This document shows positions 37,142 to 61,200 of a DNA stretch of 64,000 nt, in pieces. This DNA comes from Anolis carolinensis (Eukaryota), in contig NW_026943823.1 of the NCBI RefSeq assembly GCF_035594765.1, positions 11,222,001 through 11,286,000 on the forward strand, read 5' to 3'. A program made the position numbers and the translations under genes. The notes under the pieces were generated by a model. The model was given only the letters and a program-made list of their open reading frames with translations, ran no database searches and had not been told where the DNA came from. How positions within the stretch are numbered: position 1 is the stretch's first letter; each line of letters opens with the position of its first letter.

Positions 37142-40100
37142 AATAACTTTATTTTTATACCCCGCCCCATCTCCCCGAAGGGACTTGGGGCGGCTTACAT
37201 GGGGCCAGGCCCGATAAAACAAACAAATAACAGTAACAAAGCAATAAAACAATTATCCCAGTAAAAACATCAACATCAATAAAAACAATCATTAAAATCA
37301 ACAAGCAGGATACAGTGTTAAAAACAGGAGACTCATTCGTAGATCCCAGGCGAAATGCAGAGTGTTACGAAATGAGAAAGGAAATCTCAAGTTGAATGGA
37401 CAATAAAGTGCTGTATAAAATGGCAAGACAACAACAATGGGGACTATTATGGAATGGACAGATAGATCAATCCAGCAACAACTAAACATCGAAGGCCTTT
37501 TGGAACAGCCAGGTTTTTAAGCTCTTCCGGAAGGAGAGGAGGGTAGGGGCCTGCCTGATCTCTCTAGGAAGAGAGTTCCAAAGCCGGGGGGCCACAACGG
37601 AGAAGGCCCTCTCTCTCGTCCCCACCAACCACGACTGTGAGGGTGGTGGGAGCGAGAGAAGGGCCTCCCCCGACGAGCGAAGAGAATGTGTGGGTTCATA
37701 GAGGGAGATGCGGTCTCTAAGGTAGGTGGGTCCCAAACCGTTTAGGGCTTTGTAGGTGATAACCTGCACCTTGAATTGGGCCCAGAAAGTAAATGGCAGC
37801 CAGTGGAGCTCCTTAAACAGAGGCGTTGAACGCGCCCTGTAATTCGCTCCGGTTAGAAGCCTGGCTGCCGAACGCTGTACTAGTTGTAATTTCCGAGCCG
37901 TCTTCAAAGGCAGCCCCACGTAGAGCGCATTGCAATAGTCCAGTCTAGAGGTAACTAAGGCATGGACCACCCTGGTCAGATCAGACTTCTCGAGGTACGG
38001 TCGCAGCTGGCGCACAAGTTTTAGTTGTGCAAAGGCCCTCCCGGCCACGGCCGACACCTGAGCCTCAAGCGTCAGCCCCGAATCCAGGAGGACCCCCAGA
38101 CTGCGGACCTGCGGCTTCAGGGGGAGTGCGACCCCGTCAAGCACAGGTTGCCACCCAATACCTCGATCAGACGTACGACTGACCTGGAGGACCTCTGTCT
38201 TGTCGGGATTAAGTCTCAGTTTGTTCACCCTCATCCAGGCCAACACAGCGGCCAGACACTGGTCCAGAATCCGAGGGGCTTCCTTGGATTTAGGTGGAAA
38301 AGAGTAGTAGAGTTGGGTGTCATCCGCGTAGAGATGGCACCGTACTCCAAAACTCCGGATGACCTCTCCCAGCGGTTTCATGTAGATGTTAAAAAGCATG
38401 GGGGATAAAATAGAACCTTGCGGGACCCCACAGGTCAATGGCCAGGGGTCCGAGCAGGTGTCCCCCAGCTTCACCAACTGGGAACGACCCTCCAGAAAGG
38501 ACTGGAGCCACTGCAGTGCAGTACCCCCAAGACCCATCCCAGAGAGCCGCCCCAGAAGGATACCATGGTCGATGGTATCGAAAGCCGCTGAGATGTCCAA
38601 GAGAACCAGCAGGGTCACACTCCCCCTGTCCAGCTCCCTGTGGAGGTCATCCACCAAGACGACCAAAGCTGTCTCGGTACTGAACCCAGGCCTGAAGCCA
38701 GACTGTGATTGGTCCAGAAAATCCGTATCTTCCAAGAATCCCTGGAGCTGAGAGGCAACCACCCATATTTTCCATGGCAATTCCTAGAAAGCTGCAGAGA
38801 GTAGTATTGGCTACATAATTCATTATCCCCAGCAGCTCGGCTCTTTTTTTAAGGTCAGAAACAAGCAAACAGGAATGTTGCCATGATTTGATAATCCAGA
38901 ATATGAGCTGCAAAGATAGTGATGGAACTGAGTACACGCAAGGTTCTCAATAAAACTTCCTATCCAGACATACCAGATTCCACCAAGGTTGTTCCATGAT
39001 GTACTTTCCAACCATGTCCTGAGTCCGCACAGTTGAATACTTCAAAGTTTATGTGGGTTAAGGCTTTGAGTATAATTGCAAGCTGCTGGGTATATAGGAC
39101 TTCTCTATATTTCGGTGATCTCTTTTGAGCAGATGCAGAATAAATCATACCTGCCCTGCAGACTAGGACACGGAACAATGGCTTCAAAATACAGGAAAGG
39201 AGATTCCACCTGAACATCAGGAAGAACTTCCTCACTGTGAGAGCTGTTCGACAGTGGAACTCTCTCCCCGGGGCTGTGGTGGAGGCTCCTTCCTTGGAGG
39301 CTTTTAAGCAGAGGCTGGATGGCCATCTGTCGGGGGTGCTTTGAATGCGATTTCCTGCTTCTTAGCAGGGGGTTGGACTAGATGGCCCATGTGGTCTCTT
39401 CCAACTCTACTATTCTATGATTCTATGATTAAAGAAATATTGACAATTAAGTTTAATATGTTGACTTTACTCAGGTTATCTTCTTCTTCATGCAGAGCTT
39501 GTTTTATTTCATTTCAGGATGGGCATGGTCTTAGTATGGAGTTAAACCAGGCTGTTAGGAATTGTGGGAGTTGAACTCCAAAACACTTGGAGGGGTGAAC
39601 TTTGTCCATTCCTGGGTTAAACATAGCCTTTCTGAAAAAAGGCCATCCCATTGAAAGCACTTGTGAAATGGATGCAGGTTTCCACACCTGGAAGCTAATG
39701 CGGATGTTTTTTTTCTAGGCATCTGATGTCCTCATGGTTCAGACAGCAGCTGTTCCCCCAGGACCATGCCATTCTCCTTGCCTGGCGAGCAAAGCCAGAC
39801 CTAAGGATATCTCTCTTCAGTGGGGTAAGGTCTAAAATCTAGGTGTATGTGTGTGTGTGCAATGTTTTGTGTGAAAATGCGCCTTATATGGGCCTTGCCG
39901 CCCCGTATTTTCCAGATCCGCCTTCTACGGACGGGGGCTCAGAGGTTACGGAGTACGTTGTGGAAACCGCAAACTCTGACCAGGATGAGCGCAAACAGGT
40001 CTACCATGGCCAGGCGCTTGAATGCACAGTGACCGGTCTCCTTCCTGGGAGGACATACTGCTTCTGGATTCGAGCAGCCAACAAAGTTGGGGTATCTGGT

Positions 40101-43100: not shown

Positions 43101-46100
43101 AGCAGTTAATCATCTGAAAGATTATTTATAGTTGATATGTATATGCTTTTATAGTTTTATAATATTGTGTTTTACTGTTCTTGTTATTGTTTGAATCTGG
43201 CATTAAATTATTGCCATAGTTTGTAAGCCGCCCTGAGTGCCCCTCCGGGGGTGAGAAGGGTGGGGTATAAGTGCGGTGAATCTATATCTATATATCTATA
43301 TCGATAATAAAAGTGAAAACCCGTATGTATGTATGTATGTGGCATGGGTGTCTGTTCACACAGACAGCCTCCAGCCTCCACAAACAGGCTATAGTTCTCA
43401 GGGCTGAGGAGCCAGCAAGTCACTCTTTTCCACTGACATTGCGGTTATAGTGAGCGCCATGAACATGTATCCCAAACCCTGCCAATGTCCACCCCAAACA
43501 CTATGGCCCACTACCCAAGGAATGCTTTCATTTGGGGACCATTTCATCTTAGATCGTGCATTGTCCTCCACCACAGGCAGGCATCCCAGGTGTGAAATTT
43601 GCATGATCCCGCCTACTGCCCTTCCCTTTCCAATCTTTCTGCATAACCAACACAGCAGAACTGAGCAGCAACTAAACTTACTGGAGGTGTTTGGGGGATT
43701 GCTGTTGTACTTTACCCTGCATCAAGTCAGAGCATTGTGACTCCTACTGGGGAATTCATAGGAGTTGTAGTTCACCTACACCCAGAAGGCTATGAACCCA
43801 AACAATGATGAGTCTGGACCAAACTTGCACTGCATCCCCAATATGCCCAGATTTTCATACTGGTTGGTTTGGAGGGGAATTGGCCTGGACATTTGGGAGT
43901 AGTAGATACTGGGATTTATAGTTCACCTGCAATCGAACCCCACCGATGATGGACCAGGATCAAACTTGGCACAAAGAGCCCCCATAACCAATACAACATA
44001 TTGGAAAAGATGCATTCTTGTAAGTGAAGAAGGAGGCATCCAACCCCACCATAAGGGAGATCATTTCTCCCCTGTCCTCTCATTCTCTAGTTCTTTGCTA
44101 TGTAAAGAATTGAATGAGAAGCTTTTGGAAGCTTTAAGTTCTGTTTCCTGGCCTGGGTGGCAATGGGTCTAATCCACTCAAGATCTCTTTTTCTTTGCAA
44201 TTAAAAATTAAGTGCCCCATGTTTCATTTTACAATAAAATTTGAAGGTCATGGTATGCATTTCAGGAGTTGCAGACTTGATTATGTGTGCCTCAGCGTAA
44301 ATCCAGCCTTATTCCAACTTCTCCCCTCCCCACTAGATTCATTACGGTCTACAGCGGACCTTGTCACACATACAAAGTGCAGCGACTTAGTGAATCCACA
44401 ATATACTACTTTAAGATCCAGGCGTGTAACGATGCCGGCGAAGGGGATTTCTCTGAAGTTTACGCGTTCACTACAACCAAATCTCCACCACCGGCGCTGA
44501 AAGGTGAGGGCATGTCTCACATGTTTGTTTGTTTGTTTCTGTTGGAATATTTCATCGGCTGTCATCAGAAGATAATGTTGCTCATGAAAAAATACTTTTG
44601 TTTAAATTGTTGGTAAGAAATACAGTGCTGGAGGAGGACGCATGGGACTTGTTTGTATAAAGGTGGATTATCTTTACGAAATACCTTTTAGGGATGAGGT
44701 TAAAAAGTCTTCAGCCACTTCTTGCTTAGCTGCACTTGGAAAATACTTGAGCTGCTACATAAAGCATCCTCTGCTTAAACCATTCCAATTAGGATTTTGA
44801 TATCCAGAAGAGTTTCTGAATGAGTTTACACATTTTCTTCCATTTAAAATGCCTTCTGTTTGAAATTTAAGGGTGGTTGCATAGAATATGTTTTTGGCAA
44901 AAATACAGGATCCCTACAGAATAGATTTAGAGAAAAAATACCAAAATAGCCTTAGGATCCGCAGACTTTAAAGGCTAAAGAGCCAGAAATATTTGAAAAT
45001 AATTGGAGTCCAGAAAGGATACAGCTTTTCCAGAGGAGTGTAAGAGTGCTAAAAACTCCCTTGTTCCCATCAGATGTGAGTTTGAAACCAAGAGGGGAAA
45101 CCTGTGTATATGTGCAGGTCTCAAATGGAACAGTGCTTGGTTGTTGTGAATCTTCCAGGCTGTATGGCCATGTTCCAGAAGCATTCTTTCCTGACATTTC
45201 ACCTGCATGTATGTCAGGCATCCTCAGAGGTTGTGTGGTCTGTTGGAAACTAGGCAAGTGGGGTTATATATCTGTGGAATGAATATCCAGGGTGGGAGAA
45301 AGAACTTGTCTGTTTGAGGCAGGTGTGAATGTTTCAATTGGCCAGCTTGATTAGCATTGAATCGTCTTTTAGCTTCAAGGTCTGGCTGTTTACTAGATGC
45401 AGGTGAAACGTCAGGAAGGAATGCTTCTGGAACATGGCCATACAGCCCAGAAAACTCACAGCAACCCAGTGATTCTGGCCATGAAAGCCTTTGACGATAC
45501 ATGGAACAGTGCTTTCAAGAGAACAATCCTCTTTGAATTGAATGTAGGAACAAACATGGAGCCACAAATGTCAATATATTCAGTGGCTTACCCAAGGGAG
45601 GATTTTGTTTTTTAATAATGCATGCAAACTTTTTGATGTCTCCAAATTTCATACACCTATTCTGGAAGGATTGGAATCCTGTTTTTCTGAATCATGGTTT
45701 GGACTTGAGGTCCATATGAGATCAAGGCCAAATCAATTTGAATAAGTGAACTAGGCTCTGACTCAAATTGGGGAATCGTACCCAGCTAGACTATTTTTAA
45801 AAAAATGCAAGTTGCATAGTGACCATTGTTGGAATGCGAGGTGATGGCTCTATAGGACTTTTTGTCTTGCAAATTTTAAAAAGACGAATGTTGAAAATGA
45901 ATTGCTGGATCACAAATTGCTTTTTTCTTTTCTAGCGCCCAAAGTACATCAGCTGGGAGATAATGCCTGTGAAGTCACATGGGAGCCTTTACAGCCAATG
46001 AAAGGCGATGCCATCGTTTACATTTTACAACTTGCCAGTGGGAGGGAAGTTGATCAGGTAGTTAATAAGGGATATTTTGTTGTCTTGAAAAGTATTGTTG

Positions 46101-47488
46101 TTTCTCAAGTTTTTAAATATATAGCTGCAAAATGGACCACGTGTTGACTCTGCTGTAAATCATCACCTGAATCTTTTTTTGACAAAAGAACACCAGACAG
46201 ATTTATCTGTAGTCTTCATGCATTCAGAAGACACTGAAGATCCACAGCATTGTTCCTGGAGATGAGAAGTTGATGTTCTTGAGTACATAACCCATTTGTA
46301 TAATATTGGCATTTAATCATTTGGAGAAATAATATTTTTTTCAGAACCTGTAATTACAGTCCTACACGTTGTTCACATGCTTCTCCCGTTAATAAAGGGA
46401 GATCCCAATTTGTGATGAAAGTAATAATTTCATAGGAAATGTGAAGCTTAAAACAATGGCACTAGTTCTCATGCATGATTCGTGATTTTTTTCTGTATTA
46501 GAAGATGTTCAGCTTCAAAGTTATTTCCGTTTCCATGATTCCATAGCATAGAGCCATGCCGGTTCAAGCAGGGACAGTGTAGAGACAGCCATATGGATTT
46601 TTTAAATACATATGGATTTTTTAAAAAGATCCAAAGGGAATATCTTATGTGATTACGATTAAACAATGCCATGGAGCCCCCTTAATTATGTGCCAATATG
46701 ACTCCTTATCTTTGCGGCTCTACAGTCAACTTCTCCATAGAGCCTTGCCAATGTGCCTATGTGTCTCCTTGCGTATGGGCCTCTATGGTCAACTCACCCA
46801 TAGAGAATCCTTGCTAACTTACCTATGGGCTCCTATGGTCACCTGGGAACCGGGTGAGCTCCTGCTGTTAGCCCCAGCTTCTGCCAACCTAGCAGTTCGA
46901 AAACATGCAAATGTGATTAGATCAATAGGTAATGGGAAGGTAACGGCACTCCATGCAGTCATGCCAGCCACATGACTTTATAGGCGTCTATGGACAACAC
47001 CGGCTTTTCGGCTTAGAAATGGAGATGAGCACCAACCCCCAGAGTTGGACACAACTAGACTTAATATCAGGGGGAAAAGCTTTACCTATGTTACCATGTA
47101 CCCAATTAAAGTGTTTTCCAATAGCACCTTCCATTTTGAAATGCACATGTGCTTCTTGTTTCCTTCTCAGGTATACAAGGGACCAGAGACTTCGTTCCGC
47201 TTCTCCAACCTGCAGACAAACTGTGAATACCGGTTCAGGGTGTGTGCTGGACGCCAGTATCAGGACTCCGCTGGGCCACAAGAACTGCTAGGGCCGTACA
47301 GCCCGAGCACTGCGTTTTCATCTCAGAAGCAGGAGCTCGTGTCGCCGTGCACAGACGCGGGGTCCGACCTGCCGAAAAGCCGGAGGAAGCCGCTGAGCGA
47401 TGAACAGTTTGCCTTCTTGCTCCTCCTCATCTTCGCCACCGTTGCTATCCTGTTCGCCGTCATCATCCAGTACTTTGTGATCAAGTAA
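14753..47488 (+). CDS. FNDC3-family protein (fibronectin type III domain-containing 3; FNDC3A-like, probably the FNDC3C1-type paralogue), complete 25-exon CDS, 1196 aa
   Basis: join(14753-14848,19791-19866,22397-22473,24432-24666,25331-25615,26496-26551,29787-29941,30268-30327,31991-32129,32252-32305,33228-33349,33437-33611,34269-34355,35574-35712,36276-36344,36940-37058,39719-39824,39916-40091,40309-40422,40850-40999,42105-42385,42765-42977,44337-44503,45936-46057,47171-47488) = 3591 nt with consistent phases. Family motifs: [23 protein letters not shown], Pro/His-rich region, tandem FN3 repeats, C-terminal [33 protein letters not shown]. Confidence 0.93.
16885..17323. mobile_element. Tc1/mariner-Tigger-like MITE, second copy with internal insertion
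   Basis: Same TIRs, TA TSD. Confidence 0.85.
19791..19866 (+). CDS. FNDC3-like coding exon 2 ([25 protein letters not shown])
   Basis: tttcttttag acceptor, gtaa donor, conserved FNDC3 motif. Confidence 0.93.
19912..20047. mobile_element. Degenerate hAT MITE
   Basis: taggcattcccaaact...agtttgaggatgcctg inverted ends. Confidence 0.6.
22397..22473 (+). CDS. FNDC3-like coding exon 3 ([26 protein letters not shown])
   Basis: AG/GT boundaries, conserved motif. Confidence 0.93.
23572..23684. mobile_element. Penelope-like remnant
   Basis: Same terminal sequence as 4127, short inverted arms. Confidence 0.7.
23791..24255. mobile_element. Same Tc2/pogo-type MITE family
   Basis: Degenerate TIRs, shared internal sequence. 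Confidence 0.75.
24028..24117 (-). mobile_element. CR1 3' tip nested in a MITE
   Basis: agaatcatagaatcatag...ttggaagagacc. Confidence 0.75.
24432..24666 (+). CDS. FNDC3-like coding exon 4 (Pro/His-rich)
   Basis: [10 protein letters not shown]...HLYQEQ, AG/GT. Confidence 0.92.
25331..25615 (+). CDS. FNDC3-like coding exon 5
   Basis: [20 protein letters not shown], phase 1-1. Confidence 0.9.
26496..26551 (+). CDS. FNDC3-like coding exon 6
   Basis: tgcag acceptor, gtaagt donor, [18 protein letters not shown], phase fits. Confidence 0.85.
27380..27995 (-). mobile_element. L2-type 3' end with inserted AT-rich low-complexity tract
   Basis: [13 protein letters not shown] remnant; stem-loop gggactcagagcggcttaca. 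Confidence 0.5.
28330..29310 (+). mobile_element. Degenerate L2 LINE RT fragment
   Basis: [14 protein letters not shown] and other eroded RT/C-terminal motifs. Confidence 0.65.
29787..29941 (+). CDS. FNDC3-like coding exon 7 (first FN3)
   Basis: [16 protein letters not shown]...GKFKSVY. Confidence 0.92.
30268..30327 (+). CDS. FNDC3-like coding exon 8
   Basis: [20 protein letters not shown]. Confidence 0.92.
31149..31799 (+). mobile_element. CR1 LINE 3' fragment
   Basis: [15 protein letters not shown]...[15 protein letters not shown]; (ATTCTATG)n 3' octamer. Confidence 0.92.
31991..32129 (+). CDS. FNDC3-like coding exon 9
   Basis: [11 protein letters not shown]...KNSLNLQWK. Confidence 0.92.
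32252..32305 (+). CDS. FNDC3-like coding exon 10
   Basis: [18 protein letters not shown]. Confidence 0.92.
32546..32680. mobile_element. hAT MITE
   Basis: Same family as 12798-12936. Confidence 0.75.
33228..33349 (+). CDS. FNDC3-like coding exon 11
   Basis: [12 protein letters not shown]...[11 protein letters not shown]. Confidence 0.9.
33437..33611 (+). CDS. FNDC3-like coding exon 12
   Basis: [12 protein letters not shown]...[10 protein letters not shown]. Confidence 0.92.
34269..34355 (+). CDS. FNDC3-like coding exon 13
   Basis: [29 protein letters not shown]. Confidence 0.92.
35574..35712 (+). CDS. FNDC3-like coding exon 14
   Basis: [12 protein letters not shown]...[13 protein letters not shown]. 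Confidence 0.92.
36276..36344 (+). CDS. FNDC3-like coding exon 15
   Basis: [18 protein letters not shown]. Confidence 0.92.
36940..37058 (+). CDS. FNDC3-like coding exon 16
   Basis: KWEVAYSGP...[21 protein letters not shown]. Confidence 0.92.
37104..38760 (-). mobile_element. 5'-truncated L2-clade LINE with uninterrupted RT/C-terminal ORF
   Basis: [52 protein letters not shown]; 3' stem-loop and (TAT)n tail; apparent TSD ACCCATA at 37097-37103 and 38761-38767. Confidence 0.92.
39151..39430 (+). mobile_element. CR1 LINE 3' fragment
   Basis: Nearly identical to the 3' part of 31149-31799, ATTCTATG repeats. Confidence 0.9.
39719..39824 (+). CDS. FNDC3-like coding exon 17
   Basis: [14 protein letters not shown]...ISLQW. 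Confidence 0.9.
39916..40091 (+). CDS. FNDC3-like coding exon 18
   Basis: [14 protein letters not shown]...[18 protein letters not shown]. Confidence 0.9.
40309..40422 (+). CDS. FNDC3-like coding exon 19
   Basis: [18 protein letters not shown]...ASWE. Confidence 0.9.
40850..40999 (+). CDS. FNDC3-like coding exon 20
   Basis: [13 protein letters not shown]...[10 protein letters not shown]. Confidence 0.92.
42105..42385 (+). CDS. FNDC3-like coding exon 21
   Basis: AVNVAGAG...[12 protein letters not shown]...LQPDTLY. Confidence 0.92.
42765..42977 (+). CDS. FNDC3-like coding exon 22
   Basis: [15 protein letters not shown]...LKLKWGEG. Confidence 0.92.
43281..44000 (+). mobile_element. Helitron-like element related to 60608-61210
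   Basis: TCTATA...taaaagt...gtatgtatgt start, internal ggaccaaactt repeats; 3' end not resolved. Confidence 0.5.
44337..44503 (+). CDS. FNDC3-like coding exon 23
   Basis: [17 protein letters not shown]...[10 protein letters not shown]. Confidence 0.92.
45134..45500. mobile_element. Penelope-like remnant, inverted arms
   Basis: Homologous to 4127-4326. Confidence 0.75.
45936..46057 (+). CDS. FNDC3-like coding exon 24
   Basis: [21 protein letters not shown]. Confidence 0.92.
46845..47087 (+). mobile_element. Sauria SINE, 5' truncated
   Basis: Shares body and tail with 13826-14144. Confidence 0.8.
47171..47488 (+). CDS. FNDC3-like last coding exon (end of FN3, TM tail anchor, stop)
   Basis: [11 protein letters not shown]...IIQYFVIK*. 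Confidence 0.93.
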   Translation, partial: VYKGPETSFRFSNLQTNCEYRFRVCAGRQYQDSAGPQELLGPYSPSTAFSSQKQELVSPCTDAGSDLPKSRRKPLSDEQFAFLLLLIFATVAILFAVIIQYFVIK

Positions 47489-50093
47489 GCGAGCGGCTTT
47501 TGAGATTTGCCTTCATTACTCAGCTTATGATTATGATTATTATTTTTTCATATGGAAATTTATGCCTTGGGTATTTATGTAAATTCCAATTAAAAATGCT
47601 CGCTGGGAATGATTGTATAAGACACACATTTCCATTTTTGCTGCTGATGAACAGCAAGGCTGGGTGGGCTGGCCTCCCTCGCTCTCCTCCAAAAAGCCTC
47701 CCACCTGGGGAGAACGGAAGAGACGCAAACCCCTATTCTAGCATTGTTGTGCATTCTCTAATCAGGGTTAGCTGTTGAAAACAGCAAAAAAACAAACAAA
47801 ACAAACAGCTGCCTTAACACGCACTTGTGATTCTCAGAGAGCTCGACTTTTAATACTCTGTTTTCAAGAAAAGGGGTAAGGCATGGCCAGCCGCTTCGGT
47901 CTAAGCCTTGGCTTGTGACGAGATGCAGCAGCAGAGATGCTTAAGCGTAGAACAGTACTGTATTACAGGACATTTGCTAAAGCATACCACACCTGATATT
48001 ATACTGTAGACAAAAAAACCCAAGAATTGAAACCAAAATGTTAATCAACTTTTGACTTAATGCTACTCTTTCTATTTTAAATGTTGGTTTCCCACTCCTT
48101 TTTAATCATTGGGACTCCAATTGTTGAACGGTCAACTTTGAGATACAAAGGTAATCAGCAGACGGTGCTGACATCCTTTTAGAGAAATTATTGGAAGCCC
48201 AGTCTGTCCCTACGAGAGAGAGAGAGGGGTCTGCCTTGATGGCCCTTCTTCTATGCTGTCCATTTCTGAACAAAGTGCTTTCCATCGTCAGTAAGCAAGT
48301 GTTGGCCCGACCCAGAGTCCGCTCTCAGTGCCTGAGAGACCAGTTACTCGCCCTGTGCTTCTGACTTAAAAAGAAAAAAAAACTGCAGCCGCTTTTTCTT
48401 TTTTCTTTTCAGAAGAAAAGCACAGAAAGTTTTTTTTTTGTTTGTCTTTAACGAAAACAAAAAAAGTGCATTTATGATAAATGTTTCACTATTTGGCTCA
48501 AACTGAGCAAAAAAATGTTTTTGTACTATTCTTAACGTAAAATTTAAGAAAAATAATAATAACAATAACAAAACAAATAAAAATGCAAGCTGTGGTTAGC
48601 TTTTGGATTCTCCCCGCATGGCCCAGCCCCCCTCCCTTTATTTTTTGGGATACCCTTCTAACACAATCCAACTGATCAAGTCACATGAGGAAATGAATTT
48701 TTCTGCTCGAGTTTGAAAGGAATTGCTGCCCCTCCTGCAGTGATTCTGTGTTCCCGTCGTTTTTGTGGTTCAAGTCCTCTCTCCCCCTTGTTTTGTGGAT
48801 AAATAACTCAGTAACAGGTCTGGCTTTTGGGTGGAATAGTGTTCCCCTCCCTTCTCTCCTTTGTTTCTGGGGGGTAAATATCATGCACTACATAGGACTG
48901 TTCTGTATCAAGCCCCTGTAGCAGGTACCTGTGAAGTAGAAGTGACTCAATGTTGTCTTTACATGGCGCTCGTTTGGAAGCTGGAGAACGACCCGTTTTT
49001 GTTTCAGAGGAAGACAATGCTCACCTTCAAACGGCCACAGATATTTTTGTTACCTTTTTTGCACAGAGGTAGGGACTGAACAAAATGAGCTCCCCTTTTA
49101 CGACACATCGGGCGCTTGCTCTTGTGAGACAGTGAGAGTGACGTGTACGACTCACTTTAGCTTGAGACATGCCTCTCTTTCAGACCATAGAACATCATCA
49201 AGGTGTTTCTCAGCCAGCTGTTAGTTCATTATAAGCTTATGGTTTGTGGCATTGTGTTTGCATTTCACACCGTGGGGGGGGGGCACATATACACACACAC
49301 ATACACGCAGACGATGGTATCATATCACTTACTATCTTTAAAAAAAATAAAGTAGATTTATGGTGCAATCTGAAATTAACATTTTTTTCTCAAACAAATG
49401 TACTCTCCTTTTTTGTGATCTATTTATTTTGATTTTTAAAAAAAAGCAAATTCTGGAAAATGTATGTTTGAATGTACTGTTCTACTTGTAGCAGAACTTT
49501 TAAGTTAATCATTTATTGTAATGGATTCCTTTCTTCAGTGTTGGAAAGAGTTTTATACAAACGTTAGTGTCGGTAGTTTGCAGGGACGTTTACAACCTGT
49601 TCTCCTTCATTTCTTTTCATACTTCACTTTTTTATATAAAACAGTAGACTGTCTTCAGCCGATTTTCTGTTGCCAAAGCGTATGTGTTTCTTTTTGTTGT
49701 TGCTGTTGTTAAAACTCTGACAGAAACGATTGGGGGGGAAACAGTCTCATCGAATTGGCAATAGTACGTCAGATGCATTTTTTAAATTAGGTTTTTCTGA
49801 ATGAATACTAACCAAAATTATGACTTCCTAGAAAGTTTTAAAAAAGTTTAATTTGTATTTGTAATTGCCACAAACTGTTTATATTTCCAGAAAGTTTACT
49901 GGAAAGCATAGTGTAGAATTTTATATTTACAACTATACATTCCAGATTGATGTACTCTAGTGGCATTAATGTATTAGATTCTCCTTTTTTCTCTTGTATT
50001 GTAATTTTTGCTGTATTTCATACTTATGTTAAACCTGCCAGACATCGTATTACTAAATTGTAACTATAAATAGATAATATATTTAATATGGCC

Positions 50094-50099
50094 AATAAA
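50094..50099 (+). terminator. Probable polyadenylation signal of the FNDC3-like gene (about 2.6 kb 3' UTR)
   Basis: AATAAA at the end of a repeat-free AU-rich region, with a downstream (TG)n GU-rich element at about 50138-50162. Confidence 0.6.
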
Positions 50100-50137
50100 A
50101 ATACAAAATTGTTCACATCAGGCTTGTAGAATTACTC

Positions 50138-51290: not shown

Positions 51291-51948
51291 TATTTAAATA
51301 TAGCTCTTATATTTAAATATAGCTCTTATATGGATCTAATTTACTTATGTTTTAATTTTTATAATGTATTTTAATGATGTATTTTTATAGTTTTAATTGA
51401 TTATATGTACTGTTTTTGTTTTATTATTATGTTCTTGGCATTAAATGTTACCAACTGTGTAAGCCGCCCTGAGTCCCCCCGGGTGAGAAGGGCGGGGTAT
51501 AAATTCTGGAAATAATAATAATAAATATTTTCTCCAACTAAACATAAAGCTACTCAGAACCATGTATCAGAACTGACTAATTGAATCCATTAAATGTGTC
51601 TTTCCAGTTGGGACTAATCTTGTAAAATAGGGAGTCTTTACTCAGTTTCTGAAATCTGGCAAAACTGTTACCTTCAGGACATGCTGGACACTTGCAAGCT
51701 GCAGGCTATTGGGACGGAAAGCGCTGAAGTTACAGGCATTAGAAGATGGAGACATTGAAAAAAACAAAATCACGTTACTCTCTAACAAATAAAAAACAAA
51801 ACTTTAAAAAGGCAAACAAATGTTACAATTCATAAAGTAAGAAGTTATCATCCCGCCTTTGCTGCAGTTGGCCACTTGAAACTCAAATTTGAAGGCTGGT
51901 GAAAGAGGGAGATCGTACAGATATTTGGGAGCTGTTTCCAACACTGTT

Positions 51949-52259
51949 TTATACGAAAGAACTTCTTTCCATACCTTCAACAGAAGCCTTGTCGCTCCTG
52001 CATGAGGCCCTCGACTGCCAGGCTTGCTTCTGATTGAGGAACGTACACACAGCCTTCCTGTATTTCTGGGACATGACGTTATAAAGGATGGGGTTTACGG
52101 ACGCGCCGAGATAAAACAGCAGCATCGAGACAAGGTTGAAGTACTGGCTGATCTCGAAGTACTGGCTGATCTCGTAGAGGCCCACACTTCCTTGGGCAAA
52201 AAGGATCCGTCCGACATGTAAGGGGAGCCAACACAGAATGAAAGCCAAGACGACCACGG
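51949..52259 (-). CDS. GPCR coding exon 2 (TM6-7, C-tail)
   Basis: Acceptor ctctttctag|CC, VVVLAFILCWLP...NPILYNVMSQKYR...SSFV*. Confidence 0.92.
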
Positions 52260-53970
52260 CTAGAAAGAGGCATAAAATACCTTTCAATAGTTCCTTCCTT
52301 TTCATGTTTTTTTTTTTTTGTTGGTGGTGGCACTACTGATATTAAGCTATGTCTTACAATTGAAGAAATACATTAGGTAGATGGATAGACAGGCAGACAG
52401 ACACCTTTCATGTTACACCACTGTAGCACAGTGACTCCCAATTTAATTGTCATGGTAACATCCTGTAGAATCCTAGGGTTTGTAGTTCTGGGTTGCTGTG
52501 AGTTTTCCGGGCTGTATGGTCATGTTCCAGAAGCATTCTCTCCTGATGTTTCATCCACATCTAAGGCAGGCATCTTCAGAGGTTGTGAGGTATACTGGGA
52601 GAAAGACAGGAGTTCTTTCTCCCACCCTGGACATTATTCAGATATATAAACCTCCCTTGCCTAATTTCCAATATACCTCACAACCTCTGAGGATGCCTGC
52701 CATAGATGTGGGCAAAACATCAGGAGAGAATGCTTCTGGAACATGACCATACAGCCCAGAAAACTCACAGTGATTCCAGTCATGAAGGCCTTCAACAACA
52801 TGTTTGTAATTCTATGAGGAACAAAAGCTCTTTGCTAAACTGAGAATTCATCCCCTAAATTGCAAATCAAAGGATTCCTTAGGATGAAACCACAGCCGCT
52901 GGATTCTTCACATTTGAAGATTCAATTAGATTCAGTATAACCCAAGTTTTATATAAACATAGTTGGTGGGAAAGAGAAAATCTAATGTAGCGACAACCTA
53001 GGCAACCTCCTCAAAGTACCATCAGTAGCACCATAAACATCAGTAAATTGTTTCAGCATTCAGTACTCAACGAATGTACATTCAGTACTTGTGGAGGCTT
53101 TGGCAGGTATGTTCCAGTGCAGAATGTATCTGACATAATATCATTAAGATTGAGGTAAAATAAAGGTATTTTAACCAAACAAACAAATTTGCTCAAGGAT
53201 GGATGTTGCTTACCTAGCATCTTGATGGTTTGCTGGTGATACCTCTCTCTGGCGGGAGCATGCTGGCCCTCCAGGTTGTGTGCCGTCCTCCAGAGCTTTC
53301 TGCAGATCATCCCATAAAGGAGAACCAAGCAAAACACAGGTAGGAAAAAATAAAGGGTGGAAAGCCATGTCATGGTCTCTAGGAGCCCCGAGCGAGCCGC
53401 TTCCTTTATGTATTTGCATTCGCTCGTTTCTTCCGGAAGGCTCCCGTTGCGATGCTCTACGCCGAAGAGAAAGAGCACCGGGAGAGCCGTCACGAGCGAG
53501 CAAAGCCATAGTAGCAGGATTATGCCTTTGACGCGGCTTTTCGTAATGGTCGCTTTGGCTTTCAAGGGGAAACAGATTGCAAAGTATCTCTCGACGCTCA
53601 AAGTGGTGATGTGGAGAATGCTGGAGTACGTGCAGGTCTCGCTGAGGTAGAAAATAAACTTGCAGAGGAAATCACCAAAGACATACGGCTTGTACTTCCA
53701 GATCCTGTACAAGTCGGACGGCAAGCCGAGCAAAATCAGGCTATCGGACAGAGCCATGCTGGATAAGTACATGTTCACTGTCGTCCTCATCCCTTTATAC
53801 CGCTTAAAAATTAGAATAATGGTCACATTTCCAGCTACGCCCAAGAAAAACATGATGATGCAAATGATGGTCACAGGAATCAAGACAGGAATCTCAAACA
53901 AGGAAAAGGAAAGTTCTTCGTAATAGTCCGTATCGTTTCCAAAAGAGGTGTTCAATGAAAAGGAATCCAT
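51949..53970 (-). CDS. Ghrelin/motilin receptor family class A GPCR (GHSR/MLNR-like paralogue), 2 coding exons, 355 aa
   Basis: join complement(53970-53214,52259-51949). 7 TM segments; N-glycosylation sequons NTS/NDT; YLSSMALSD, SETCTY, SVERYFAICFPL, CWLPLHVGR, NPILY. Phase-1 intron after QTIKML, the position used in GHSR/MLNR. Good Kozak gaaATGg with an in-frame stop upstream. Confidence 0.92.
52138..52173. repeat. Perfect 18-nt tandem duplication in GPCR exon 2
   Basis: gaagtactggctgatctc x2, encoding EISQYF-EISQYF. Confidence 0.95.
52488..52800. mobile_element. Penelope-like remnant, inverted arms, inside the GPCR intron
   Basis: Homologous to 4127-4326. Confidence 0.78.
53214..53970 (-). 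CDS. GPCR coding exon 1 (N-terminus to ICL3, TM1-5)
   Basis: ATG 53970, donor CTAG|GTAAGC at 53214/53213. Confidence 0.92.
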
Positions 53971-54392
53971 TTCTGGCCAAGGCTGGTTTCTTCTTACCAA
54001 GGTATGGATCCCATTTTGGAAAAGATTGACACTTTGACATGAAGTTTCCAAATGCCACTAGAAGTCTCCACTGACAGGTGCCGTTTCCTTGAGCTGTTTC
54101 CCTTGCAAGACTGGGGCCTACTAATATAATTACATTTCCTAAAGAACATGACGCTTTAGTCTTGTGATATTGGCTTCTTGGAGTCACAAATATGGCAAAA
54201 GGAAGGAATCTGCATACCTATTGGAAGGAAGAGAAAAATAGAATTTACACAGCCAGCATTTAAGTGGGTAAAAAGTCTACCAAATTCAGTTAATAGTGTT
54301 AGAATTGGAGTACAAACAAGCTTAGATGTTAAAGCAAATGCTAATTATTAAAAGTCATAAATTAATAGGCAATACACTGAGAAACTTCTTAC

Positions 54393-54645
54393 CTCCTTGC
54401 AGATGGTTTGCCCGATCCTTCCATTAATTCAGAATTGCAGTTTCGTCTTCCTACTCGGAATGGTTACATTTTCATCCTATTTAGCCTCAATATAATTTTA
54501 AATAGAAAACGATCAGCCAAGGCGTTTGTACCTTTGCTAGTCAGAGAAAGCAGCCAGGCATACAAACCTAGTCAAATGCCACATCTCCCATGAAATGTGT
54601 TGGGAGTGTTTGATTTTTTTTTGAGTGCTCCGGCCCCTTTCCCCA
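54393..54645 (-). other. Candidate non-coding first exon of the GPCR (intron 54392-54218)
   Basis: Donor gag|gtaaga at 54393; acceptor tttttctcttccttccaatag| at 54218; 5' end estimated from the TATA position. Confidence 0.45.
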
Positions 54646-54670
54646 GCTAAGCATGACAAATGCGGCAGCG

Positions 54671-54698
54671 TTTTATAGCCATCTATCAACATCATTGG
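54671..54698 (-). promoter_or_regulatory. Candidate core promoter of the GPCR (CCAAT box 54698-54694, TATA box TATAAAA 54677-54671)
   Basis: Minus strand reads ggCCAATg...ggcTATAAAAcg, about 280 nt upstream of a strong donor GAG|GTAAGA at 54393. Confidence 0.5.
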
Positions 54699-55338
54699 CC
54701 ACTTAAGCAGGCCTCATTGAACAGCTGGCTCGGCCTCCCCGTCTTTTTCTCCTCCATCTATCAAGCCAAAGTGGAGACTGTCCCTCATTACCTGGGAGGT
54801 CCGAGTTGTGGCTTGATACCGCAAATCTAATTAGAAGGGCTGGATCGATCCCATTTTCCCAGTGTGTCTTAGCAACCGAGGGGAGGACAACACATTTTTG
54901 CTGACTCCCATTTGCCCAAGTCAAGGTGGATTCATACCCAAAGCCAGTTGAGCTACTTTGGCACACTGGGCAGAATATTACACAGGCAAAAAGAAGGCAA
55001 CATTAAAAAAACAATTTGCTGTTATACCACTCTGTTGTCCAAAGGAACAGCCTTACTCTGCCTAATTGTAGGACTGGCCCTGCTTAACCAATGAGTTGTT
55101 CGCACGAAAAGGGATTATTTTCCCCTCCTGCCTTGGGCTTATTTGAAGCAGATGGAAGGATTTTGGTTGAGTGTGTATTTTTGTATAGTCACAAATCCAT
55201 ATGACCATCAATTCAGTCAGTGGGAGACTGTGCTTTTTCCTTCTGTGATCATTAGGCTTAGCTAAACACATTACAACACCAAAAAGTATAGGCCACTGGG
55301 AGCTAAAAGATCAATATGAGAGTTTCCTTCCATAACCT

Positions 55339-55679: not shown

Positions 55680-56382
55680 TGGGTTGCTGTGAGTGTTCCG
55701 GGCTGTATGGCCATAATCCAGAAGCATTATCTTCTTCTTCTTTATTTATTTAAAACATTTATATTCCACCCTTCTCACCCCAAAGGGGACTCAGGGCTGA
55801 GCGCAACATATATAAGGCAAACATTCAATGCCAGAACATTAAATACGATATAAATACATAAACATTAAAATCTCCACTTAAAATCAATTGTTTAAAATCA
55901 TCTCAGGTCAGCCATACCTAAAATCATCTCCTGATGTTTTGCCCACATTTATGGCAGGCATCCTCAGAGATTGTGAGGTCTGTTGGAAACTGTTGAACAT
56001 CTGGAGAAACTGTTCCAAGACACATGGAAAAACAGTAGATGTCCAGGAAAGCACATCTACCGTGCTACCTAAGCTTCCTTCTATGCTGCAGAGACACAGA
56101 TGCTATCCCACAATTTCCCACACCCAAAATGACTTTCAAAAAACCACAGGCTCACCGTATTTATGACTACCTGGAATGCAACCTCTTATGAGCCCACCCT
56201 GGACATTATTCCAGATATATAAACCTCACTTGTACAGTTTCCAGCAGACCTCACAACTTCTGAGGATGCTTGCCATAGAGGTGGGTGAAATGTTAGGAGA
56301 GAATGCTTCTGGAACATGGCCATACAGCCTGGAAAACTCACAGCAACCCAGTGATTCTGGCCATGAAAGCCTTCGACAACAC
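55680..56382. mobile_element. Penelope-like remnant, inverted arms, interrupted by an L2-type 3' end
   Basis: Arms at about 55680-55990 and 56190-56382. Confidence 0.7.
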
Positions 56383-57786: not shown

Positions 57787-57936
57787 CAGTGCAAACCCGA
57801 GACATCCTTTTTTTCCTATCTCCAGCTATATAGACTTGATGGAAAGGTACCCTCTACTGATGGAAGTTTTCCGTAGACATTGAGAACCACAAACCGTGAC
57901 CAAAAGAACCAGTGAAAGCATGCAATTTCCCACCGT

Positions 57937-57942
57937 TTTATT
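57937..57942 (-). terminator. PolyA signal of the STARD10-like gene
   Basis: AATAAA on minus, about 75 nt after the stop codon. Confidence 0.6.
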
Positions 57943-58015
57943 GTAAAAACAACTAGGCAAGGCACAGCGGCAGACTAGCGGAAGGCTCCCAAGCAGAGAG
58001 GGAGCTGAAGCGGGG

Positions 58016-58237
58016 TCAGTTCTCGGGGCCGCTGGTGTCCCCCTTCTCCTCCTTGGCTTCCAATAATCCGCTCTCGTCTATGTTCTCCAGAGAGGAGGCG
58101 TGTTGGAGAGACAGGTCGGAGAGGGCCATGGTGGGGAGCTGGTTCTGCTCGGGGTGCAGCCACGGCTTTGTGCTGGCCTTGCGCTCCTGCTTCCAGGAGG
58201 GGTATTTCAAGCACGCCTTGTGCATCTTCTTCATCAT
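58016..58237 (-). CDS. STARD10-like last exon
   Basis: MMKKMHKACLKYPSWKQ...KPWLHPEQ...SLENIDES...PEN*. Confidence 0.9.
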   Translation of the reverse strand: MMKKMHKACLKYPSWKQERKASTKPWLHPEQNQLPTMALSDLSLQHASSLENIDESGLLEAKEEKGDTSGPEN

Positions 58238-61200
58238 CTGCCACGAGGAGGGGAAAGGAGAGGGTTAAAAGTGGGCGTTCTCTGTGCTAAAGGCTCAAAG
58301 ATTGCAGAACCCAAGACCACTGCAGTCTATTTCACTGCCTGAAGCAAAGGCTGAGACAACACTTCCCCCAATTCTATGTAAAAAGACCAAATTCTTTCTT
58401 CCAATACTTGGTGATGGGTAAGCATAAGCATCTTCTAGCAGGCTTTAAGGCAGAAGACCAGACAGGAGACAGTGGCGCAAGGAGTTAAACCCTTGTGCCG
58501 GCAGGACTGCTGACATGAAGGTTGTCGGTTCAAATCCGGGAGAGAATGGATGAGCTCCCACTGTCAGCTCCAGCTCCATGTGGGGACATGAGAGAAGCCT
58601 CCCAGAATGATGGTAAAACATCAAACATCTGGTCATCCCCTGGGCAACATCCTTGCAGATGGCCAATTTTTTCACACCAGAAGTGACTTGCAGTTTCTCA
58701 AATCACTCCTGACATGAAAAAAAGGAGACACAAGGCATCAACCTGTCATGACTTCTCCTTGTACCACATCAAGTTTCAAGTTTATTTGGTGCTTAGGCCA
58801 TATGTCTTTCACATGCAAGGCAAACAAACAAATACATGAAAACCAGATTATTAAATACAATATAAAACACACCATTAAAACCCTTTATAAATCATTAAAA
58901 TGACCATTTGGGAGGAACATTTCAAGTGTAATCTGGAAACACTGAAATGATAATTGCCCCAAGATCTTGGGAAGGGAGGCAAAGACTCCTTTCTCACTCT
59001 GGCAACTCTGCTGATCATAAACAACAAAGTTCCTTGGGAAAAATAGACCCTTCATTGAATGACAATTAGGACTGTCATTCAAATCTTCCTGCTGCATCAA
59101 TATCATGAGCTGGAGGATCTGTAAAATGGGGGGAGGTTACACTAGGATATGCCTAGTGTACTGGTTGGTAGTGGCAAATTCAAGGTTTTCTTTTGGCGCG
59201 ATGGGTTCAATCCTGTGCCGGCTGAACTGCTGACCTAAAGGTTGGGTTGCTGACCTGAAGGTTGCCAGTTTGAATATGCGAGGAGTGAGCTGCCATCTGT
59301 CAGCTCTAGCTTGCGGGGACATAAGAGAAGCCTCCCAGCAGGATGGCAACACATCCGGGAAATGTCTCTGTAGATGGCCAATTCTCTCACACCAGAAGCT
59401 ACTTGCAGTATGTTTTCAAGTAGCTTCTGACACGATTAAAAAAGTGAGCTGGAGGATCTCTGAAATAGTGGGAGACCACAGTAGGACATGCCTAGTGTAC
59501 TGGTTGCTAGTGGCAAATTCAAGGTTTTGTTTTGGATTTTGCCCCAAATATTTCCTGGCCTCCGTTGGTTGAATCTGTGGATGCAAAACCCATGGCTATG
59601 GAAGGTTAACTATACTGGGAAAACCAAAAGCTTAAGCAACCTCAAGTCTCAGCCTTAAGTCAGCAAAGACTCAATGAAATTTGCATGATAAGACAATATG
59701 TCCCGAGTGCACGCCATGTTTTATGAGTGATGCCTGTCCATATCTCTGGCCAAGGGGATTCATGTCTTGGATTGTATAGCATGGAATAATCCTGATACAA
59801 ATGGCCTCTGCCTCTTGACCAACCCATCCCACTCGAATGAAGGCTGCAGCGAGTCAACTAATGCTGTTCCCAGGCTCAGCTGAGACCTCCTTACCTTTGG
59901 TGCCAGGTACTGGGAAGCTTTATTCACAACCCACTTGGGCAGCGACCCTAGTTCATGGAAGAAACAGGAGGGAAAAACAAAAAAAGCGAAGTGGACATTT
60001 GTACTTTTTTCTGTTTGAAGGCCTAGCCCAGGCATGGGCAAACTTTGGCCCTCCGGGTGTTTTGGACTTCAACTCCCACAATTCCTAACAGCCGATAGGC
60101 TGTTAGGGATTGTGGGAGTTGAAGTCCAAAACACCTGGAGGGCCGAAGTTTGCCCATGCCTGGGCTAGCCAGTCCAAATGGCAACTCCTTAGCAACTGAG
60201 TAGCAGAAACACAAGTAATGGTCTTCTCTGTTATGGGTTTTTTTTTTCAAATGCTGGGAATAATTTCTAAGTTTGCAACATGGGAAAGTTGCCTCCTACC
60301 AAATTAAACCATGTATCCGTCTGCATGCCCAGTTTTGGATACAGTGGGTTTCCAGGGTCCTAAGTAGTTGCAGTGGTGGATCCTTCCCATCTTCTGCAAC
60401 CTGAGCAAGAGGGTCTCTCAGATTCAACAGGGCCGGCACATTACTTTCTGAGACTTAAATAATGCATGTTACTACCTCAGTGTGTAACAAGAGGGAACAA
60501 CAGCAAAGGCCCAGTCCCATTAACAAGCAAACATAAATAATTGCACCAAGAAAGCAATATATATAAGTCGGAACAGGTACATTTCCAAGTATAACTTCTG
60601 TCAAATATCTATTTATAGAATAAAAGTCATTGTCTGTTTGTATGCATGCATGTGGGTGGCAATGTATTTTTGTGTCTGATTCCCACTTCCAGAGACCACT
60701 GCGACTCCCACCAATGATGGACCTGGACCAAACCTAGGACAGAGACTCCACCCATGACCCACTTTATGTCCTGGTGAGGTTTAAGGGAGGATGGATCTTG
60801 GATGATGGGATTTGCAGTACCTTCCCCATATTCAGAGACTACTGCTAACCCTATCAGCCATGGATCTGGACCAAATTTGGGATACAGAACCCCCCCCCCC
60901 CCAATGACCCACTTTATATCCTGGTGAGTTTTAAGGGAGGATGGATCCTGGATGATGGGATTTGCAGTACCTTCTCCCACACCCAGAGACTACTACTAAC
61001 CCCATCAACCATAGATATGGACCAAACTTGGGACACAGATTCCCCCATGACTATTGTAAATAAAGGGTGTGGGGAGAAATGACAGAGGATGATGGGACTC
61101 GAGTCCACCCATATCCGTATGCATTTTCTAATGAGTCCATTCATAACAGTCAAAAACAAACAATGACTTTTTGTAATGTTTATCCCTTGATCAACGGGTA

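What the first reader, a model, noticed from the sequence alone, without database searches (positions are those of the whole stretch)
51949..53970. Intact orphan receptor: a candidate third ghrelin/motilin receptor lineage
Seen: a 355-aa 7TM protein with the single GHSR/MLNR-type intron after QTIKML. It mixes GHSR-like features (short ECL2 GVEHRNGSLPEETSEC, RSGLL, FFLPVFCL, SVERYFAICFPL) with MLNR-like ones (LGLPxDLYR, LHIT, VVVLAF, HVGRI, SQYFN). It diverges from both more than I expect for a reptile orthologue. Known: the GHSR peptide-pocket residues D2.60, E3.33 and R6.55 are retained here. Inference: a whole-genome-duplication ohnologue absent from the human repertoire, with an unknown ligand (ghrelin, motilin, LEAP2 or an unidentified peptide), hence a possibly undescribed gut/brain hormone system.
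Basis: partly seen in the sequence, partly recalled or inferred. Interest (0 to 1): 0.85.

Follow-up and report, generated by a model that had tools for sequence, protein, structure and literature searches.

The report
Third ghrelin/motilin receptor, catalogued but untested
This anole gene is a real, spliced third member of the hunger/gut-hormone receptor family; lizards, turtles, crocodilians, many birds, amphibians and primitive fishes keep it and no mammalian copy was found, and although a 2019 genome survey almost certainly listed it, I found no test of which hormone switches it on.

Summary
In detail: an intact two-exon, 355-aa class A GPCR (- strand, 53970-51949) with the family's phase-1 intron, spliced in two public runs and under purifying selection (dN/dS about 0.1). 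It is neither GHSR nor MLNR. It belongs to a third clade (98/88 support) spanning squamates, turtles, crocodilians, non-passerine birds, amphibians, sturgeon, bichir, gar and bowfin, and several species carry all three receptors. It sits tail-to-tail with a third FNDC3-family gene (TAF9-type gene upstream in swift and frog), paralleling FNDC3B-GHSR and FNDC3A-MLNR, which fits a whole-genome-duplication origin. The lineage is not undescribed: RefSeq labels it 'GHSR type 1-like', and Rinne 2019 named an 'MLNRB/MLNR3' clade in coelacanth, Xenopus and both reptiles surveyed (matched by taxon pattern, not by ID). I found no functional study. D2.60, E3.33 and R6.55 are family-wide and do not identify the ligand. 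The pocket keeps GHSR's open acyl cavity (small 4.60/5.40) but lacks Q3.29 and F7.39, and follows MLNR at 10 of 16 diagnostic sites and GHSR at none. Best reading: a Gq-coupled second receptor for acyl-ghrelin and/or motilin. A new hormone is about 20% likely.

The parts
53214..53970 (-). Exon 1 (ATG at 53970; N-terminus, TM1-TM5, ICL3; 252 codons + 1 nt)
   Evidence: dN/dS 0.075 vs Sceloporus
52260..53213 (-). Single 954-bp phase-1 GT-AG intron at the family-conserved position; holds a high-copy, partly palindromic repeat at about 52488-52770
   Evidence: removed in spliced contigs; repeat:
51949..52259 (-). Exon 2 (TM6, ECL3, TM7, helix 8, C-tail, stop TAA)
   Evidence: dN/dS 0.11 vs Sceloporus
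52138..52174 (-). Perfect 18-bp tandem duplication adding 6 residues to ECL3/top of TM7 (349 -> 355 aa); present without gaps in reads of other samples
   Evidence: records 4 and 18
53971..54988 (-). Upstream non-coding blocks conserved with Sceloporus (78-79%): candidate 5' UTR/promoter; not detectably conserved beyond lizards
51351..51425 (-). Candidate polyadenylation hexamers about 520-590 nt after the stop; in an AT-rich repeated stretch, so uncertain
   Evidence: repeat depth
40300..50120 (+). Neighbour: 3' exons (stop at 47488, C-terminal membrane anchor) and long conserved 3' UTR of an FNDC3-family gene, convergent with the receptor; a paralogue distinct from the FNDC3A beside MLNR
57825..62422 (-). 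Neighbour: exons of a START-domain gene upstream on the same strand (seen here only in lizards)

Best explanation
The gene is the anole member of a third jawed-vertebrate paralogue of the ghrelin/motilin receptor family. It was made by duplication of an ancestral FNDC3-receptor block (most likely the early vertebrate genome duplications), kept for more than 400 million years in several lineages, and apparently lost in mammals and others. It most likely works as a cell-surface peptide receptor: the N-terminal amine of acyl-ghrelin and/or motilin binds E3.33, shifts the E3.33-R6.55 salt bridge and the W6.48/H6.52/F7.42 cluster, and opens TM6 to Gq, giving IP3/Ca2+. Shown: intact gene, splicing, purifying selection, separate clade, conserved synteny, conserved activation and G-protein-contact residues. 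Inferred: origin by genome duplication (about 0.8), Gq coupling (about 0.8), and ligand among the two known peptides (about 0.65: both 0.25, ghrelin-preferring 0.22, motilin-preferring 0.18).
For: Clade support 98/88, separate from GHSR (100/99) and MLNR (100/99), amphioxus/NMUR/NTSR as outgroups; nesting with lizard GHSR rejected. All three paralogues in Bombina, Xenopus tropicalis and bichir. Mean identity within the clade 67%, to GHSR 50%, to MLNR 51%, GHSR-MLNR 51%. Receptor convergent with an FN3 gene in fence lizard, swift, turtle, spadefoot and bowfin, with a TFIID-31kDa gene upstream in swift and spadefoot. Swift MLNR lies between another FN3 gene and a dCMP-deaminase gene on another chromosome; GHSR lies beside a TNF-family gene and FNDC3B (PMC4797157). 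Window FN3 exons are 59-90% identical to the swift gene at the third locus but 47-71% to the one beside MLNR. D2.60, R2.63, E3.33, ERY, L34.51, K34.54, W6.48, H6.52, R6.55, F7.42 and NPxxY are invariant or nearly so in 58 orthologues; their roles are from PMC8568970 and PMC10017046. Cavity II is open-type: I/V4.60 and T/A5.40, against F4.60/L5.40, which shut ghrelin out of human MLNR. ECL1 has Y and K/R at the GHSR Y106/R107 ghrelin contacts. Coelacanth GHSR is activated by both ghrelin and motilin, so cross-use is a real state in this family (bioRxiv 10.1101/2023.06.03.543543). The model of the A. sagrei orthologue (pLDDT 86) matches GHSR, then MLNR structures best.
Against: No ligand or signalling data exist here. 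Q3.29, invariant in GHSR and needed for ghrelin potency, is V/I/F; F7.39 is M; F6.51 is L in this protein and 13 of 58 orthologues; the A204 position is variable. The clade has 8 invariant sites of its own. Some zebrafish and croaker GHSRs bind neither peptide, so orthology does not guarantee ligand use. The branching order of the three paralogues is unresolved (AU p 0.34 for third+MLNR, 0.07 for third+GHSR), lamprey genes group with GHSR, and no shark member was found, so the duplication is not dated directly. The runs are only guessed to be RNA, depth is low, and the tissue is unknown.
Confidence: 0.62

Rival explanations
1. It is the receptor of an undiscovered ghrelin/motilin-family peptide (a third ligand paralogue lost in mammals): a separate hormone system.
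For: Long independent retention under purifying selection; pocket differs from GHSR at 3.28, 3.29, 5.40 and 7.39 and from MLNR at 4.60 and 5.40; clade-specific invariant sites; kept in frogs, where no motilin has been found (PMC8419268).
Against: No third ligand gene is listed for the family and ghrelin is single-copy across vertebrates. Frogs also keep MLNR without a known motilin and do have ghrelin. The pocket core is intermediate between the two known receptors rather than novel.
Confidence: 0.2
2. It works largely without an agonist: constitutive Gq signalling tuned by an antagonist such as LEAP2, or modulation of GHSR/MLNR by heterodimerisation.
For: GHSR has high basal activity and binds LEAP2 (own knowledge; LEAP2 antagonism); fish GHSRs that bind LEAP2 but not ghrelin exist; several ghrelin contacts are changed.
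Against: The ECL2 alanine tied to GHSR basal activity (A204; role from own knowledge) varies in this clade, whereas the agonist-sensing residues 2.60, 2.63, 3.33, 6.55, 6.58 and 7.35 are held nearly invariant.
Confidence: 0.12
3. It is simply a diverged lizard GHSR or MLNR orthologue, or a decaying duplicate.
For: Databases name members 'GHSR', 'GHSR-like' or (gar) 'motilin receptor'; the ECL3 duplication is unusual; an anole MLNR was not seen in my searches.
Against: A. sagrei has a separate canonical GHSR; Pogona has both this receptor and an MLNR-clade protein; different flanking genes; AU rejection; dN/dS 0.075-0.25; spliced transcript.
Confidence: 0.03

Closest known systems
MLNRB / MLNR3 of Rinne et al. 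2019 (PMC6504862)
   Same: A non-human subtype near MLNR in coelacanth, Xenopus and the two reptiles surveyed (Anolis carolinensis, Pelodiscus), none in their five birds or in mammals. My clade holds X. tropicalis, Pelodiscus and Anolis and has no galliform, duck or passerine hit. Almost certainly the same clade.
   Different: The match is by taxon pattern; I could not fetch their Ensembl IDs and found no coelacanth member. They give one sentence with no synteny, expression or pocket analysis. Here the clade extends to crocodilians, many non-passerine birds, sturgeon, bichir, gar and bowfin, and is not shown to be an MLNR subtype (branching order unresolved).
GHSR (ghrelin receptor, GHS-R1a)
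   Same: Same intron, fold, ECL2 length (15 residues to C45.50) and GVEHxNG motif, ECL1 Y/K contacts, I/V4.60, E3.33-R6.55, linkage to an FNDC3 gene.
   Different: About 50% identity; separate clade and locus; lacks Q3.29, invariant F3.28, F7.39 and V5.40; matches GHSR at 0 of 16 GHSR/MLNR-diagnostic columns.
MLNR (motilin receptor, GPR38)
   Same: Same intron and fold; MLNR residue at 10 of 16 diagnostic columns (several also ancestral); M7.39; linkage to an FNDC3 gene.
   Different: About 50% identity; separate clade and locus (not FNDC3A-CDADC1, opposite orientation to the FNDC3 gene); lacks the bulky 4.60/5.40 pair that closes the acyl cavity.
Fish GHS-R1a-LR, GHS-R2a and GHS-Ra-LR2a/b ('GHSR2')
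   Same: Extra GHSR-like receptors without a human orthologue and with unclear ligands.
   Different: Teleost GHSR copies nest in GHSR. A very divergent teleost group, probably LR2, forms its own long-branched clade outside this one, and its reported neighbours are ECI1/TAC4.

Membership tests
Class A GPCR, ghrelin/motilin receptor family | 7tm_1 domain with ERY, CWxP, NPxxY and the TM3-ECL2 disulfide | tested here: met
Class A GPCR, ghrelin/motilin receptor family | Monophyly with GHSR and MLNR to the exclusion of amphioxus receptors, NMUR and NTSR | tested here: met
   100/98; GPR39 was not in the tree
Class A GPCR, ghrelin/motilin receptor family | Single phase-1 intron before TM6 | tested here: met
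Class A GPCR, ghrelin/motilin receptor family | E3.33-R6.55 salt-bridge pair and D2.60 | tested here: met
GHSR orthologue | Nests in the GHSR clade | tested here: not met
GHSR orthologue | Flanked by TNFSF10 and FNDC3B | tested here: not met
   vs 46, 61, 74
GHSR orthologue | Ghrelin-contact residues Q3.29, F3.28, F7.39, V5.40 | tested here: not met
   F107, I106, M298, T201
GHSR orthologue | Activated by acyl-ghrelin, antagonised by LEAP2 | not testable with these tools
   needs a cell assay
MLNR orthologue | Nests in the MLNR clade | tested here: not met
   a sister relation to the whole MLNR clade is not rejected
MLNR orthologue | Tandem between FNDC3A and CDADC1 | tested here: not met
MLNR orthologue | Activated by motilin | not testable with these tools
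   needs a cell assay
MLNRB/MLNR3 (Rinne 2019) | Present in Xenopus, Anolis and Pelodiscus; absent in the surveyed birds and mammals | tested here: met
MLNRB/MLNR3 (Rinne 2019) | Groups with the type sequence ENSLACP00000009190 (coelacanth) | not testable with these tools
   sequence not retrievable by ID; no coelacanth member among listed hits
2R ohnologue of GHSR and MLNR | Split predates the ray-fin/lobe-fin divergence | tested here: met
   sturgeon, bichir, gar and bowfin members; sharks already have separate GHSR and MLNR
2R ohnologue of GHSR and MLNR | Lies in a paralogous block on a different chromosome | tested here: met
   each receptor beside a different FNDC3 paralogue; different swift chromosomes; only one shared neighbour family tested
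2R ohnologue of GHSR and MLNR | Duplication timed to the early vertebrate genome duplications | tested here: inconclusive
   amphioxus is outside, lamprey placement uncertain, branching order unresolved

The most novel reading that the evidence does not exclude
The receptor answers to an undiscovered third ghrelin/motilin-type peptide retained in reptiles, many birds, amphibians and basal fishes: a whole feeding/gut-motility hormone axis that mammals lost.
Probability: 0.2. Interest if true: 0.75.

Novelty: already known. Interest (0 to 1): 0.42.

Why it matters
Ghrelin-field surveys state that tetrapods have one ghrelin receptor (PMC4797157; PMC11919490), yet many non-mammalian tetrapods carry this third receptor, often mislabelled 'GHSR' or 'motilin receptor'. 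Ghrelin or motilin effects measured in lizards, turtles, frogs or non-passerine birds may partly run through it, and automated orthologue sets may be contaminated by it. Its pocket is a natural intermediate (open acyl cavity on an MLNR-like scaffold), so one cheap cell assay would show how acyl-ghrelin and motilin selectivity arose. The existence of the lineage is not news; its ligand would be.

Tried and rejected
Diverged GHSR orthologue: rejected. MLNR orthologue: rejected by tree and synteny. Pseudogene, or assembly slip at the 18-bp repeat: rejected; the repeat is in frame and lies without gaps in contigs of other samples, including a spliced one. Longer N-terminus: the frame is open upstream (TTG at 54051) but has no ATG, and lizard and turtle orthologues mostly start at the same methionine. 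Teleost divergent GHSR-like group as orthologue: not supported, though its very long branch makes placement unsure. Paper searches for GHSR2/GHSR3, MLNRB and 'GHSR-like receptor' found no functional study. Yun et al. 2015, the source of the GHSR1/2/3 names, and a paper on ghrelin loss in snakes could not be fetched, and one mistaken DOI failed. No paper naming Fndc3c1 with its neighbours was found. FNDC3B exons were not within 10 kb of the GHSR loci fetched, so no three-way FNDC3 tree was built. The ESM Atlas look-up of a START exon was uninformative. The single-sequence fold was not collected. The scan's own notes held nothing on this gene. DNA for the X. tropicalis locus was withheld and not pursued.

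Full report
Observation. The minus strand carries a two-exon gene: exon 1 53970-53214, a 954-bp GT-AG phase-1 intron, and exon 2 52259-51949; together 1068 nt, or 355 residues plus stop. Both exons match 7tm_1. The best solved relatives are GHSR (E 1e-79) and MLNR (1e-68), far ahead of NTSR1 and NMUR. For full-length work I used the Anolis sagrei orthologue P0001 (94% and 89% identical to the two exons). No human contig was fetched or compared; horse GHSR served for residue numbering. The host is an Anolis lizard.

Expression and selection. No holder was on record as RNA. However, two contigs from different studies join 53214 directly to 52259, exactly removing the predicted intron: X8 record 26, and X13 record 4, the latter under another species label (table 8). 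This shows a spliced transcript at low depth. Tissue is unknown and no pure DNA control was laid. dN/dS is 0.075 and 0.11 against Sceloporus and 0.13 and 0.25 against swift. A perfect 18-bp duplication (52138-52174) lengthens ECL3 by six residues. It is present without gaps in other samples, and A. sagrei has a different, ten-residue duplication in the same loop.

Family and range. About 90 close relatives (58-94% identity) come from lizards, amphisbaenians, turtles, alligator, palaeognath and other non-passerine birds, all three amphibian orders, sturgeon, paddlefish, bichir, gar and bowfin. Most are named 'GHSR type 1-like'. With GHSR and MLNR sets and outgroups from amphioxus, NMUR and NTSR, the careful ML tree gives three clades: this one (98/88), MLNR (100/99) and gnathostome GHSR (100/99). 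Joining the lizard proteins to lizard GHSR is rejected (AU p 1e-54). A sister relation to MLNR (p 0.34) or to GHSR plus lampreys (p 0.07) is not rejected, so the branching order is open. All three clades are about 50% identical to one another. Bombina, X. tropicalis and bichir each have all three; A. sagrei and Podarcis have this gene and a separate GHSR; Pogona has this gene and a fast-evolving MLNR-clade protein. I could not search the window's own genome for GHSR and MLNR; Kaiya 2013 lists a 345-aa green anole GHS-R1a. No mammal, snake, passerine, falcon, galliform, teleost, shark or coelacanth protein appeared in this clade among the listed hits. That is absence from a protein search with partly listed clusters, not proven gene loss.

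Synteny. The receptor lies tail-to-tail with an FN3-repeat gene in this window, fence lizard, turtle, swift, spadefoot toad and bowfin, with a TFIID-31kDa (TAF9-type) gene upstream in swift and spadefoot. The neighbour is FNDC3-family (E 2e-22 to an FNDC3A domain). It is closer to the swift gene at the same locus than to the gene beside swift MLNR (90 vs 63, 88 vs 71, 76 vs 47 and 59 vs 50% over four exons). Swift MLNR sits on another chromosome between that FNDC3 gene and a dCMP-deaminase gene. GHSR is flanked by a TNF-family gene and FNDC3B (PMC4797157). So each receptor travels with its own FNDC3 paralogue, and the intron is identical in all nine loci. From my own knowledge, not tested here, TAF9B and Fndc3c1/FNDC3CP are neighbours on the mammalian X, which would make this the third block of the paralogon, with the receptor dropped in mammals. 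A genome-duplication origin is likely but not dated.

Mechanism. The activation machinery described for GHSR and MLNR (E3.33-R6.55 bridge, W6.48/H6.52/F7.42, ERY, NPxxY, ICL2 L34.51 and a basic 34.54) is essentially invariant across 58 orthologues. A model of P0001 is a confident 7TM bundle closest to GHSR, then MLNR. Gq coupling is therefore inferred. The discriminating positions are mixed. Like GHSR: I/V4.60 and a small T/A5.40 leave open the cavity that takes the octanoyl chain, which F4.60 and L5.40 close in human MLNR; ECL1 keeps Y and K/R; ECL2 has GHSR's length. Unlike GHSR: 3.29 is hydrophobic rather than Q, 7.39 is M as in many MLNRs, and at 16 columns strictly diagnostic between GHSR and MLNR the clade follows MLNR in 10 and GHSR in none, several of these being ancestral states. 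Coelacanth GHSR is activated equally by ghrelin and motilin. The simplest reading is a receptor that kept an ancestral-type pocket for one or both known peptides (about 0.65). One untested hint leans to ghrelin: frogs keep the gene though no motilin is known in Xenopus, while passerines and falcons, which lost ghrelin (PMC11919490), gave no hit; snakes are also reported to lack ghrelin (own recollection, not verified). Mammals and apparently chicken lack the receptor while keeping ghrelin, so the pattern is one-way at best.

Prior art. Rinne et al. 2019 report 'one novel subtype, MLNRB' in coelacanth, amphibian and two reptiles, called MLNR3 in their supplement; their reptiles are Anolis carolinensis and Pelodiscus. 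This matches my clade by taxa, though not checked by ID. Furlong and Seong 2017 tabulate GHSR1/2/3 plus MLNR. Ghrelin- and motilin-field reviews I read do not mention it and state one GHS-R in tetrapods. No ligand, expression or physiology study turned up in ten library searches; subscription papers are not covered.

Verdict. Real, intact, spliced and correctly recognised as a third lineage, but already annotated and almost certainly already named. It remains an orphan. New here are the wider range, the FNDC3/TAF9 synteny, splice evidence and a pocket analysis that makes the ligand question directly testable. Interest 0.42. A new hormone system has about 0.2 probability and would merit 0.75.

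Noticed in passing
window 52138-52174 and protein P0001 ECL3: Two anoles carry different tandem duplications in the same extracellular loop 3 (6 residues here, 10 in A. sagrei), while the other orthologues displayed have none.
   Followed up: partly
protein P0347 (Pogona): The one squamate MLNR-clade protein seen has a very long branch (1.45) and is labelled 'GHSR-like'; no squamate appeared in the top 120 MLNR hits. Lizard MLNR may be diverging fast along with lizard motilin.
   Followed up: partly
proteins P0348, P0349, P0350, P0352, P0362, P0551: A very divergent teleost GHSR-like clade (stem 1.79), probably GHS-Ra-LR2/'GHSR2', separate from the lineage studied; a possible fourth paralogue.
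   Followed up: partly
No third-clade hit from passerines, falcons or snakes, groups reported to have lost ghrelin; possible co-loss.
   Followed up: no
window 47489-50120 (+): The FNDC3-family neighbour has a 2.6-kb 3' UTR with blocks conserved from lizard to bowfin (about 48440-48525 and 50030-50115, the latter around an AATAAA at 50094).
   Followed up: partly
window 57825-62422 (-): A START-domain gene lies just upstream in anole and fence lizard but not within 10 kb in swift, turtle or spadefoot, where a TAF9-type gene or nothing is called; possible lizard rearrangement.
   Followed up: no
window 52488-52770: High-copy, partly palindromic short repeat in the intron, with related copies near 4176-4325, 45130-45470 and 55680-56350.
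   Followed up: no
window 37482-38780 (-): 432-codon ORF with a reverse transcriptase domain, probably a LINE fragment inside the FNDC3-family gene.
   Followed up: no
proteins P0091/P0552 (gar), P0022 (alligator), many bird entries: Members of this clade are misnamed 'motilin receptor' or plain 'GHSR' in public databases.
   Followed up: yes
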